Notes under the pieces: generated by a model | Told to the model about the DNA's origin: nothing | What the model saw: the letters and a program-made list of their open reading frames with translations, nothing else | The model's database searches: none | IMG/VR virus record: IMGVR_UViG_3300028840_005860 | Coordinates: 1 to 64,000 of that record | Direction: 5' to 3' (one strand) | DNA length: 64,000 nt | Shown here: positions 26,538 through 27,390 of the stretch, piece by piece | Layout of the letters: each line of letters starts with the position of its first letter | Position numbering within the stretch: position 1 is the stretch's first letter | Position numbers and translations under genes: made by a program

Positions 26538-26579
26538 AAAAAGCGAACCCCCTCGGATGTAGCCTCACCGAGGGGGTTC
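26538..26579 (-). terminator. intrinsic terminator closing the ncRNA locus
   Basis: 12-bp stem GAACCCCCTCGG/CCGAGGGGGTTC with U tract on the minus strand. Confidence 0.8.
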
Positions 26580-26666
26580 TGGGTTGCATAACTTCGAGGC
26601 CCGAAGGCCACCTTGTCGTGCGGCCGGCTTCCACGTCCACGACAGTTCCCAGCCCTTAGATCTGAA

Positions 26667-26791
26667 CGTCCGCGTCTTTGCGTTCGACCAGGACCCCATG
26701 AGGAGGGAGGCTCGAGGCTCGAACTCGGTGGGAGCATGTACTCCGGCTTCCCTTGGCGGGGTCCGCAGGACTCCAACCCGCATCTCGGACG
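26667..26791 (-). ncRNA. circularly permuted tRNA-like element B with intervening segment after CCA
   Basis: Minus strand: GTCCG-AGAT-GCGGG TTGGAGT CCTGC-GGACCCC-G-CCA, 56-nt insert, GGGGTCC-TG-GTC GAACGCAAA GAC-G-CGGAC; all four stems pair. Confidence 0.75.
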
Positions 26792-26864
26792 GGGGTGTGG
26801 CTGGTCGGAGAGAGGACGAGGTCCGGCTAGCTGTTGAGCTTGGGAGATAGCTTGAGGTTCAGGT

Positions 26865-26967
26865 GAGCTCCGTCTTGGACTCCCCTCGAGAAGGGGTGCG
26901 TCTACCGATTCCGCCACCCCGTGTCAGGTCACGGGGGAAGGGTTCGAACCTTCACGTCCTGGAACTC
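26865..26967 (-). ncRNA. circularly permuted tRNA-Leu-like element A (Y-RNA/YrlA-like topology)
   Basis: Minus strand: GGAC-GTG-AAGGTTCGAACCCTTC-CCCCGTG-acctga-CACGGGG-TGGCGGAATCGGTAGACGC-A-CCCCT tctcg AGGGG-A-GTCC; outer stem GAGTTCC/GGAGCTC. Confidence 0.8.
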
Positions 26968-27074
26968 GGGTTCAGCTTGAGGCTGAGGTTCAGCTTGTCT
27001 CCGGTCCGTCTCCACGTTCGTGGATGACGGGCTCTGTACCCTCCTTTCAGTTGGGTTCCAGAGAAGATGACACG

Positions 27075-27390
27075 TCAGGCTCCGTTCGAGCCCCTGGCGA
27101 AGATGAAGTCGAGGACCTTCCGGCCGACCTTCTGGTCGTCGGCTTCGATGGAGTTGGCCTGCTCCCTGGCGAACTTCACCGCGTCCGCCAGCTGCCTGAT
27201 GCGCTCGAGCAGGACCTTCTTCCGTGGCCTCGGGATGGCGCCCGAGAACTTGGTCGTGGTCCAGTGGCCCACCACCACGTCCTCGGTGATGAGCTGCGTC
27301 TGGGCCGGATGGTGCTCGGTGGCGTCGTACAGGACGATGCCCTTCTGCATCTTCTTCGTCTTGTGGGTCTTGATCTCCCCGCTCCTGCTC
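27075..27390 (-). pseudogene. C-terminal part of a DUF7873-like protein
   Basis: KTHKTKK...VLYDATEHHPAQ..LITEDVVVGHW...KFSGAIP...AVKFAREQAN matches the family C-terminus as recalled; the N-terminus is replaced by an out-of-frame unrelated ORF starting at 27582. Confidence 0.6.

What the first reader, a model, noticed from the sequence alone, without database searches (positions are those of the whole stretch)
26538..27390. Composite ~450-nt ncRNA downstream of a DUF7873-like gene: candidate undescribed RNP system
Seen: after the DUF7873-like stop (27075), the minus strand carries unpaired CTGAAC/CAAGCT repeats on both sides of element A, then element B. A 3' domain follows (TGTCGTG/CACGACA stem, C(UUCG)G tetraloop at 26598-26609, CTGGG/CCCAG closing stem), then a strong terminator. 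Inference: one transcript with two or three tRNA-elbow mimics plus repeated single-stranded protein-binding motifs, partnered with the adjacent protein. It could be a decoy for anticodon nucleases or for tRNA-sensing defences. My recollection that this protein family neighbours long non-coding tracts and TROVE genes in bacteria needs checking.
Basis: partly seen in the sequence, partly recalled or inferred. Interest (0 to 1): 0.8.

Follow-up and report, generated by a model that had tools for sequence, protein, structure and literature searches.

The report
Tandem tRNA-mimic RNA partnered with DUF7873
The stretch encodes a ~465-nt non-coding RNA with two tRNA look-alike modules and 6-base repeats; the same RNA sits next to one uncharacterised protein family (DUF7873) in hundreds of bacteria and phages, which points to an undescribed RNA-protein particle.

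Summary
Window 27002-26538 (minus strand) encodes one composite RNA. In order it has a 6-nt repeat array, a tRNA-Leu-like module A, a second array, module B, a 3' domain and a terminal hairpin/terminator. Both modules run T arm, closed 7-bp acceptor stem, D arm, which is the topology of bacterial Y RNA YrlA.

- **Linkage:** the same RNA follows DUF7873 genes on the same strand in 74 of 80 bacterial loci from at least six phyla, in 55 of 63 viral loci, and in cultured Gordonia, Klebsiella and Ralstonia phages. An RNA-only search returned DUF7873 upstream in 30 of 32 assessable hits.
- **Structure:** covariation is strong.
- **Processing:** conserved discriminators, frequent encoded CCA, G+1/U-1, and metatranscriptome contigs ending at the CCA and restarting at G+1 of module B point to RNase P/CCA-type processing.
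- **Not YrlA proper:** no TROVE/Ro60 neighbour, no Ro-binding motif, and scores below the Rfam threshold.
- **This window:** only the C-terminal ~100 aa of DUF7873 survive.

Function is unknown. My best guess is a Y-RNA-like particle in which DUF7873 binds the repeats. It is a new variant of a known kind, of high interest.

The parts
27382..27582 (-). 67-aa N-terminal ORF piece (MERAAEL...), unrelated to DUF7873. It lies in a different frame from the C-terminal piece, and the frames switch near a GGGG run at about 27385.
   Evidence: Translation and GC3 by frame. No Pfam or PHROG hit. No relative in any fetched locus.
27075..27392 (-). DUF7873 C-terminal remnant: a long beta-hairpin carrying the EHPAQ motif plus a helix carrying AVKFAREQAN. 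It is open from 27392, its first ATG is at 27350, and its stop codon is at 27077-27075.
   Evidence: PF25283 at E=4.6e-39, profile positions 148-243 of 244. Full-length relatives are ~245 aa. dN/dS against L002 is about 0.28.
26538..27002 (-). The whole ~465-nt non-coding RNA, from the conserved GGAGAC-CAAGCU 5' end to the U-run.
   Evidence: Collinear with the RNAs of phage L002 and of Nannocystales bacteria L079-L081. The 5' end is inferred from the metatranscriptome contig starts in relative L131.
26968..26997 (-). Hexamer array 1 (CAAGCU GAACCU CAGCCU CAAGCU GAACCC); family consensus N-A-R-R-Y-U.
   Evidence: 6-nt periodicity.
26865..26967 (-). Module A, a tRNA-Leu-like mimic.
- Closing helix GAGUUCC/GGAGCUC plus GGAC/GUCC
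- T arm 26953-26937
- Acceptor 3' strand 26936-26930
- A73 at 26929, CC at 26928-27, loop UGA
- Acceptor 5' strand 26923-26917
- D arm 26914-26898
- Extra hairpin 26896-26882
   Evidence: Sequence. Motif scan. R1 partial hit of 18.8 bits at 26953-26889. The D arm is of tRNA-Leu type. The MFE fold recovers the cloverleaf-like fold.
26827..26864 (-). Hexamer array 2 with the conserved central motif (..CUCAAGCU AU CUCC CAAGCU CAACAGCUAG).
   Evidence: Alignment of 64 loci.
26613..26821 (-). Module B (YrlA-like) with its enclosing helices.
- P_far 26818-14 / 26638-34
- P_outer 26804-26799 / 26654-49
- Inner stem 26791-87 / 26671-67
- T arm 26781-26765
- Acceptor 3' strand 26764-58, G73 at 26757, CCA at 26756-54
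- Acceptor 5' strand 26697-91
- D-like arm 26688-72
   Evidence: Covariance model R1, built without this sequence: 47.2 bits, E=3.8e-12, full length. Helices covary.
26698..26753 (-). 56-nt structured insert in the acceptor 'loop' of module B. It starts right after G-CCA and is specific to the Nannocystales/phage clade.
   Evidence: It is shared by L002 and L079-L081.
26598..26644 (-). 3' domain: the candidate pseudoknot stem UGUCGUG/CACGACA and the lineage-specific GGCC(UUCG)GGCC hairpin at 26609-26598.
   Evidence: Sequence. Analogous stems in other clades were seen by eye only.
26538..26579 (-). Terminal hairpin (12-bp stem, loop UGAGGCUACAU) followed by GCUUUUU. It acts as an intrinsic terminator and as a conserved loop motif.
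   Evidence: 12-bp stem in the window, and the loop motif is enriched 42 of 125 against 8 controls. Also.

Best explanation
Window 27002-26538 (minus strand) is the gene of a ~465-nt non-coding RNA. It belongs to a widespread family, absent from Rfam 15, that is genetically coupled to DUF7873.

**Shown**
- The RNA has a fixed order: 6-nt repeat array; module A (T arm, closed 7-bp acceptor stem, tRNA-Leu-type D arm, discriminator A); second array; module B (same topology, discriminator U or G) clamped by two covarying long-range helices; a 3' domain; and a terminal hairpin.
- The RNA and DUF7873 predict each other's presence, in bacteria and in phages.

**Partly shown**
- In a relative the RNA has its own start at the conserved GGAGA-CAAGCU.
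- In that relative it is found as separate pieces. One ends exactly at the CCA after module B's acceptor 3' strand and the next starts at G+1 of the 5' strand. This fits RNase P cleavage plus CCA-type 3' maturation, as published for Mycobacterium smegmatis YrlA.

**Inferred**
- The pieces stay together through the acceptor stem and the two clamps.
- DUF7873, probably as a multimer, binds the single-stranded 6-nt repeats.
- The particle presents tRNA-like ends to tRNA-handling enzymes, acting as a tether or decoy in the manner of Ro60-Y RNA particles.

**In this phage**
- The protein gene is truncated to its conserved C-terminal third.
- The RNA therefore either works with that remnant or plugs into the intact DUF7873 of its likely Nannocystales-type host.
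For: Linkage:
- Motif scan: 141 of 155 loci have a permuted tRNA-like element within 1.5 kb downstream. Density is 2.05 per kb there against 0.145 per kb elsewhere.
- Covariance model R1: 74 of 80 bacterial loci have a hit downstream on the same strand, plus 2 divergent. 55 of 63 viral loci have one, as do Gordonia phages Phendrix and Ronaldo, Klebsiella FBKp24 and Ralstonia phiRSL1.
- Reverse search by an RNA pattern: 30 of 32 assessable loci have DUF7873 177-652 nt upstream.

Structure:
- 91.5% of cells are paired, against 60% in shuffles and 44% when partners are slid. The covariation score is 0.85 against 0.25.
- The acceptor stem has at least 6 of 7 pairs in 112 of 123 modules that were defined without using it, across 90 distinct sequences.

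tRNA and YrlA likeness:
- Rfam YrlA aligns both modules in L140 (34.4 and 20.5 bits).
- Module A's D arm is of the same type as the phage's own tRNA-Leu genes.

Processing:
- Discriminator is A in 54 of 62 A modules, and U or G in 61 of 63 B modules. CCA follows in 17 of 62 and 24 of 63. G+1 is present in 59 of 63 and U-1 in 39 of 63 B modules.
- Metatranscriptome contigs cover L131:6761-6941 and end at U-CCA. The next match starts at 6960, which is G+1. Depth is ~68 upstream against ~7 downstream and 0 on the CDS.
- M. smegmatis precedent: PMC4201824.

Repeats and protein:
- 6-nt periodicity.
- Weak Foldseek leads to Cas7/RAMP proteins, which bind RNA with a 6-nt period.

Window:
- The RNA matches R1 full length at E=3.8e-12 and is collinear with Nannocystales RNAs.
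Against: - There is no direct evidence that DUF7873 binds the RNA or the repeats.
- The Cas7/RAMP resemblance is weak (E 0.003-0.3, TM about 0.1-0.15).
- The RNA evidence is a single metatranscriptome. It consists of assembled contigs of relatives 85-97% alike, not reads of this phage. One contig runs 4 nt past the CCA and another has 7 unmatched nt before G+1.
- No RNA run holds the window itself.
- Module A is absent in Ca. Uabimicrobium, so the Leu-like module is not essential.
- The closing helix of module A is supported in only about a third of loci by a constrained test.
- Two viral loci carry the RNA behind an unrelated 679-aa ORF.
- The biological function is entirely inferred.
Confidence: 0.6

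Rival explanations
1. It is a genuine bacterial Y RNA (YrlA) that works with a Ro60/TROVE protein encoded elsewhere. DUF7873 is only a neighbour.
For: It has the same T arm, acceptor hairpin and D arm order enclosed by a stem. Rfam YrlA gives sub-threshold hits. YrlA also occurs in phages and can be cut by RNase P and receive CCA.
Against: - Scores are far below the gathering threshold (34.4 and 20.5 against 69). No YrlA hit appears in the window even at E up to 10.
- No TROVE gene is a recurrent neighbour.
- The 5' GNCGAAN0-1G motif is not enriched: 3 of 62 loci against 3.2 expected.
- The arrays, the tandem modules and the 3' domain are absent from YrlA.
- The reciprocal linkage is to DUF7873.
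Confidence: 0.1
2. Elements A and B are decayed remnants of tandem tRNA genes (3' half of one plus 5' half of the next), or functional circularly permuted or split decoding tRNAs.
For: The 3' half lies upstream of the 5' half. CCA is encoded. In phages the locus lies in or beside tRNA clusters. Module A resembles tRNA-Leu.
Against: - The two acceptor strands of each module are complementary to each other across 90 different sequences, which tandem remnants would not preserve.
- The architecture is conserved across at least six phyla and always lies next to DUF7873.
- The anticodon arm is absent or has 3- to 6-nt loops in many loci.
- Neither ARAGORN nor Rfam tRNA calls them.
Confidence: 0.05
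3. It is a phage counter-defence decoy. The tRNA-Leu-like body and the repeats soak up a host tRNA-targeting toxin: the repeats read as U33-NAR-R37, resembling Leu anticodon loops, or as Leu codons YUN.
For: - Module A is of Leu type.
- The hexamer consensus fits both readings.
- The locus is embedded in tRNA arrays of phages.
- The RNA is kept in this window while the protein is truncated.
Against: - The module is equally common in bacterial chromosomes among housekeeping genes.
- DUF7873 has no PADLOC hit.
- Module A is dispensable in some lineages.
- No toxin partner is known.
Confidence: 0.15
4. It is a two-piece tmRNA-like rescue RNA, or the repeats encode a small (K/R)(L/F)n peptide.
For: The permuted acceptor/T arrangement with an intervening segment resembles permuted ssrA genes. 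The repeats translate as alternating basic and hydrophobic residues (my reading).
Against: - G3:U70 is present in only 2 of 35 B modules.
- There is no conserved frame, start or stop across loci.
- Arg would be coded only by AGR in genomes of 65% GC, and Asn/Ser substitutions fit an RNA-level A-R-N pattern rather than a protein-level one.
- ARAGORN and Rfam tmRNA find nothing here, although they do find a true tmRNA in L005.
Confidence: 0.03

Closest known systems
YrlA, the bacterial Y RNA-like tRNA mimic (Rfam RF02553; Chen et al. 2014, PMC4201824)
   Same: - The tRNA-like domain runs T arm, closed acceptor-like hairpin, D arm, enclosed by a stem.
- It is found in both bacteria and phages.
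- It is encoded next to its protein partner on the same strand.
- A 7-bp acceptor stem allows RNase P cleavage and a CCA end.
   Different: - The partner gene is DUF7873, not Ro60/TROVE.
- There is no GNCGAAN0-1G motif.
- Two (sometimes one to three) modules sit in tandem, one of tRNA-Leu type.
- It has 6-nt repeat arrays, two long-range clamps, a conserved CUUAAACG segment and a terminal GGNUA hairpin.
- It is ~450 nt rather than ~110-150 nt.
- It scores below the Rfam threshold.
Two-piece tmRNA from circularly permuted ssrA genes
   Same: The acceptor 3' strand with CCA lies upstream of the acceptor 5' strand, with a variable intervening segment that is removed. The pieces are held together by pairing.
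   Different: There is a true D arm, no Ala identity pair, no tag reading frame and no SmpB link.
Circularly permuted tRNA genes (Cyanidioschyzon merolae, some archaea)
   Same: The 3' half precedes the 5' half in the gene.
   Different: Those mature into normal decoding tRNAs through circular intermediates. Here the anticodon arm is not conserved and the module is embedded in a larger RNA.
Class 1 CRISPR crRNA-Cas7 backbone
   Same: Only as a working analogy: a 6-nt periodicity of single-stranded RNA, and weak Foldseek hits of the DUF7873 model to Cas7/RAMP proteins.
   Different: There is no CRISPR array and there are no cas genes. The repeats are sequence-specific hexamers, and the structural similarity is not significant.

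Membership tests
YrlA / bacterial Y RNA (RF02553) | tRNA-like domain: T arm, acceptor-like hairpin and D arm enclosed by a stem | tested here: met
   The YrlA model aligns both modules of L140 in this order. Covariation of the T, acceptor, D and enclosing helices is strong. The window's module B matches the derived model at E=3.8e-12.
YrlA / bacterial Y RNA (RF02553) | Reaches Rfam's gathering score (69 bits) | tested here: not met
   Best scores are 34.4 and 20.5 bits in L140. There is no YrlA hit in the window even at E up to 10, and none at gathering in the window or in 11 loci.
YrlA / bacterial Y RNA (RF02553) | Encoded within ~4 kb of a Ro60/TROVE gene on the same strand (criterion of Chen et al. 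2014) | tested here: not met
   No conserved neighbour was found in 80 bacterial loci with up to 6 kb of flank on each side. TROVE is not among the families hit by two or more of 96 neighbouring ORFs. None of the 20 window ORFs scanned is a TROVE protein.
YrlA / bacterial Y RNA (RF02553) | 5' GNCGAAN0-1G motif (putative Ro60 contact) | tested here: not met
   3 of 62 loci have it in the 5' region, against 3.2 expected by shuffling. The only match in the window lies inside module B's D-like arm.
YrlA / bacterial Y RNA (RF02553) | Bound by Ro60 in vivo | not testable with these tools
   This needs immunoprecipitation.
Canonical tRNA (RF00005) | Cloverleaf in the order acceptor, D, anticodon, T, with a 7-nt anticodon loop | tested here: not met
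   The order is permuted and the acceptor stem is closed. The anticodon arm is missing or aberrant in many loci. ARAGORN and Rfam make no call at 26538-27002.
Two-piece tmRNA | G3:U70 alanine identity pair and a tag reading frame | tested here: not met
   G:U at that pair occurs in 2 of 35 modules. No conserved frame or stop was found. There is no tmRNA call here, whereas L005 has a true one.
DUF7873 (PF25283), the window's protein | Full-length match to the 244-position profile | tested here: not met
   Only positions 148-243 match (E=4.6e-39). The N-terminal 67 aa are unrelated and in another frame. The gene is a truncated or chimeric member.
RNase P / CCA-processed tRNA-like substrate (as M. 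smegmatis YrlA) | 7-bp acceptor stem, G+1, a discriminator followed by CCA, and ends observed at those sites | tested here: inconclusive
   The sequence features are met. Ends at U-CCA and at G+1 were seen only as contig ends of relatives in one metatranscriptome. No data exist for the window itself.
Cas7 / RAMP fold (for DUF7873) | Significant structural match to a RAMP core | tested here: inconclusive
   The AF2 model has pLDDT 87. Cas7, Csm3 and 'RAMP superfamily' proteins dominate the top Foldseek hits, but at E 0.003-0.3 and TM about 0.1-0.15. There are no sequence hits to PDB, PADLOC or NCBIfam.
Intrinsic terminator | G+C-rich hairpin followed by a U-run | tested here: met
   A 12-bp stem at 26579-26545 is followed by GCUUUUU.

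The most novel reading that the evidence does not exclude
DUF7873 and this RNA form a previously unrecognised class of ribonucleoprotein. A repeat-binding (possibly Cas7-like) protein multimer sits on the hexamer arrays. RNase P and the CCA-adding enzyme convert the RNA into a multi-piece particle with two free tRNA-type acceptor ends. One of these is leucine-type and may be aminoacylated. Bacteria would use the particle, and phages would copy it, to sense, sequester or redirect tRNA-handling enzymes. Phages such as this one, which keep the RNA but have lost most of the protein, would then hijack the host's particle.
Probability: 0.12. Interest if true: 0.95.

Novelty: new variant of a known kind. 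Interest (0 to 1): 0.8.

Why it matters
A structured ~450-nt RNA with a dedicated protein partner is conserved from Actinomycetota to Myxococcota, Planctomycetota, Chloroflexota and Abditibacteriota. It is also in dozens of cultured phages, including Ralstonia phiRSL1, Klebsiella jumbo phages and Gordonia, Arthrobacter and Vibrio phages. It appears in neither Rfam 15 nor the searchable literature.

It extends the small set of bacterial tRNA mimics. It shows that the YrlA design is not tied to Ro60. It also offers tractable hosts and phages in which to ask what tRNA-like 'handles' on non-coding RNAs are for.

There is a practical consequence too. In deposited phage genomes these tracts are unannotated gaps. 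In at least one (Klebsiella FBKp24) a feature labelled as a suppressor tRNA overlaps the module.

Tried and rejected
- **Rfam on the window:** gathering and E up to 10 gave nothing meaningful in the tract.
- **Megablast of the region against phage records:** no match.
- **Promoter scan in the window:** none upstream of the RNA.
- **MFE z-score:** not significant at -0.83.
- **Conserved protein neighbours:** none except a PTH2-like gene in five jumbo-phage loci.
- **TROVE search among neighbours:** negative.
- **PADLOC, NCBIfam and PDB sequence searches with DUF7873:** no hits.
- **Literature:** 'DUF7873' occurs in no paper. Searches on permuted tRNA, YrlA and tRNA mimics found no description of this RNA.
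- **RNA runs for the window:** only DNA runs were found.
- **Closing helix of module A:** a broad test could not discriminate (6.94 against 6.34). A constrained test gave a modest signal (35% against 24%). RNAalifold on a MAFFT alignment did not recover the helix.
- **Pseudoknot stem covariation:** could not be quantified on the MAFFT alignment.
- **Peptide reading of the repeats, and the tmRNA reading:** both considered and rejected (see the rival explanations).
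Full report
**Setting.** The window is 66% G+C with many short genes and six or seven tRNA genes. It comes from a 230-kb IMG/VR viral contig (L001). On the minus strand a weak PTH2-like gene, two small genes and a DUF7873-like gene precede the finding. A convergent plus-strand gene ends at 26523.

**The protein gene.**
- Pfam DUF7873 (PF25283) matches only the piece 27392-27075, at E=4.6e-39 over profile positions 148-243 of 244.
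- Full-length relatives are about 245 aa and begin MPKLNQIIAIEKG.
- Here that part is replaced by an unrelated 67-aa piece (27582-27382) in another frame, with no relative anywhere. The frames change near a GGGG run at about 27385.
- I searched the pieces separately.
- The retained piece holds the family's most conserved motifs (EHPAQ at the tip of a long beta-hairpin, and AVKFAREQAN in a helix). Its dN/dS against its nearest relative is about 0.28.

**Anatomy of the RNA (minus strand, 27002-26538).** Read against relatives, the tract contains, in order:
1. A conserved GGAGAC start.
2. Hexamer array 1 (26997-26968).
3. Module A (26967-26865).
4. Hexamer array 2 with a central AU-CUCC motif (26864-26827).
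5. Module B with two enclosing helices (26821-26613).
6. A 3' domain.
7. A 12-bp terminal hairpin with a U-run (26579-26538).

Each module runs T stem, TTCGAAC-like loop, T stem, 7-nt acceptor 3' strand, discriminator (often followed by CCA), a variable 'loop', a perfectly complementary 7-nt acceptor 5' strand, U8-R9 and a D arm. It is a tRNA body whose acceptor stem is closed and whose ends are moved elsewhere.

**Is it more than chance?**
- I fetched 14 and then 63 viral loci and the best 80 of 429 bacterial genome loci that encode DUF7873.
- A simple scan finds the permuted pattern within 1.5 kb downstream, on the same strand, in 141 of 155 loci. The density is 2.05 per kb in the first 700 nt against 0.145 per kb elsewhere.
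- When modules are defined only by T loop and D arm, 112 of 123 have at least 6 of 7 acceptor pairs, against about 3 of 7 when the partner is slid. There are 90 different acceptor sequences.
- An alignment of 35 module-B regions gives five helices (two long-range clamps, T, acceptor, D). 91.5% of cells are paired, against 60% in shuffles and 44% slid, and the covariation score is 0.85 against 0.25.
- A covariance model built from that alignment, without the window, hits the window at 26821-26613 with 47.2 bits, E=3.8e-12, full length, with a 56-nt insert in the acceptor loop.
- The same model finds the RNA downstream of DUF7873 in 74 of 80 bacterial loci, plus two in divergent orientation, and in 55 of 63 viral loci. 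It also hits cultured phages: Gordonia Phendrix (79.7 bits) and Ronaldo, Klebsiella FBKp24 and Ralstonia phiRSL1.
- In the deposited records of Phendrix, phiRSL1 and FBKp24 the tract is an unannotated gap of about 450-510 nt. In Phendrix it lies inside the tRNA array.
- In the reverse direction, an RNA-only pattern scan of IMG/VR gave 35 loci. Thirty have DUF7873 177-652 nt upstream on the same strand and three are cut by contig ends. Two carry a true A+B RNA behind an unrelated 679-aa ORF.

**The repeats.** Array 1 shows a lag-6 autocorrelation of 0.417, against about 0.24 at other lags and none in a control region. The consensus is N-A-R-R-Y-U. By eye, the hexamers on either side of the central motif change together between lineages as direct repeats, not as complements. 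That pattern suggests a shared reader rather than pairing.

**What the modules resemble.**
- Rfam's YrlA model aligns both modules of an Actinomadura locus in the same T, acceptor hairpin, D order inside a stem, but at 34.4 and 20.5 bits against a threshold of 69.
- Chen et al. 2014 (PMC4201824) define YrlA by three features: linkage to Ro60/TROVE within 4 kb, a 5' GNCGAAN0-1G motif, and this tRNA-like domain. They also show that M. smegmatis YrlA, which has a 7-bp acceptor stem, is cut by RNase P in vivo and acquires CCA.
- Here the first two features fail. No protein family other than DUF7873 recurs near the locus. TROVE is not among the families hit by two or more of 96 neighbouring ORFs. 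The neighbours are ordinary, unrelated genes. The motif is at chance level.
- Module A's D arm is of the tRNA-Leu type. In Phendrix, only the phage's two tRNA-Leu genes share it. Its discriminator is A in 54 of 62 modules. Module B has U (48) or G (13) in 63 modules.

**Processing.**
- CCA follows the discriminator in 17 of 62 A modules and 24 of 63 B modules; a given triplet would turn up there by chance only about 2% of the time (my estimate). B modules have G+1 in 59 of 63 and U-1 in 39 of 63.
- No RNA run holds the window.
- For the Ca. Uabimicrobium amorphum locus, one marine metatranscriptome holds contigs of two relatives. Two contigs (187 and 185 nt, depth 38 and 30) cover 6761-6941. 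They start 7 nt after a TATAAT box, at the conserved 5' motif, and end at the A of U-CCA after module B's acceptor 3' strand.
- The next match begins at 6960, the first base of the acceptor 5' strand. Depth falls from about 68 to about 7, and the coding region has none.
- This is what RNase P cleavage plus CCA-type 3' maturation predicts. However, it rests on contig ends of relatives in a single library.

**The protein.**
- The AlphaFold model is confident (pLDDT 87) but has no significant structural neighbour.
- Cas7, Csm3 and 'RAMP superfamily' proteins dominate the weak hits in both libraries (E 0.003-0.3, TM about 0.1-0.15). This is notable only because those proteins grip RNA every 6 nt.
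- The ESM atlas links the fold to DUF6847 phage proteins.
- There are no hits in PADLOC, NCBIfam or PDB sequences, and no paper mentions the family.

GGCUGG pairs upstream with CCAGCC, not with the downstream CCCAG. The TGTCGTG/CACGACA stem is compatible only as a pseudoknot with the covarying clamp. The UUCG hairpin is lineage-specific. The terminal hairpin's GGNUA-type loop recurs (42 of 125 loci against 8 controls).

**This phage.** Its RNA is collinear with those of phage L002 and of Nannocystales bacteria, including Paraliomyxa miuraensis. The match extends to the structured insert that starts right after G-CCA. With the protein truncated, the RNA may work with the remnant or with a host DUF7873. 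That is inference.

**Verdict.** This is a real, conserved and apparently undescribed RNA-protein module. It works like a Y RNA/YrlA-type tRNA mimic but fails the membership tests for YrlA, tRNA and tmRNA. Its function is unknown. The mechanism I favour is stated in the best explanation, with the shown and inferred steps marked.

Noticed in passing
window 29103-29174 (-); L002:1989-2067; L004:1990-2068: ARAGORN calls a tRNA-Leu(aag) just upstream of the PTH2-like gene. Rfam tRNA confirms the homologous position in L002 and L004 (about 51 bits) but not in the window at gathering. It may be a diverged or decaying tRNA.
   Followed up: no
window 28256-29038 (-): A gene with a weak C-terminal PTH2 (peptidyl-tRNA hydrolase) match recurs upstream of DUF7873 in five distinct jumbo-phage loci (L001, L002, L004, L005/L028, L011/L038). 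It is the only recurrent protein neighbour.
   Followed up: partly
L174:7709-7998 and L177:594-883: A genuine A+B RNA (R1 gives 43.9 and 26 bits) lies downstream of a 679-aa ORF that has no Pfam hit, instead of DUF7873. This may be an alternative protein partner.
   Followed up: partly
L112:5594-5748 (-) and L120:5633-5787 (-): In two bacterial MAG loci the RNA lies upstream of DUF7873 on the opposite strand (divergent) rather than downstream.
   Followed up: no
L160 (Klebsiella phage FBKp24) 2518-2597: The deposited record annotates a 'tRNA-OTHER / tRNA-Sup-TTA' that overlaps the 5' part of the module-B match (2529-2701). This is probably a mis-call of the permuted tRNA-like module. The record also marks a promoter right after the DUF7873 gene.
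   Followed up: partly
L004:5249-5325, L007:4645-4720, L011:4765-4841, L148 about 7100-7200: Some relatives carry an extra tRNA-like element in the 3' domain. In L004, L007 and L011 it has normal order, odd anticodon loops and Rfam tRNA scores of 46-50 bits. L148 has a third permuted module. The number of modules therefore varies from one (Ca. Uabimicrobium) to three.
   Followed up: no
L005:6561-6965: A 393-kb viral contig encodes a full tmRNA (111.9 bits; ARAGORN reads the tag as ANDNAIRAAA) and two tRNAs that ARAGORN labels SeC(tca), about 1-2.3 kb downstream of its DUF7873-RNA module.
   Followed up: no
window 42840-44432 (-), 48783-49751 (-), 32620-33594 (+): The phage encodes a DpdA-QueD (PTPS) fusion, which suggests 7-deazaguanine DNA modification. 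It also encodes a DruA-like protein and a spermidine synthase.
   Followed up: no
L008:2901-3500: A vWA-domain protein is encoded immediately upstream of DUF7873 in one viral contig. My recollection is that Ro60 proteins also carry a vWA domain, but no TROVE domain was seen here.
   Followed up: no
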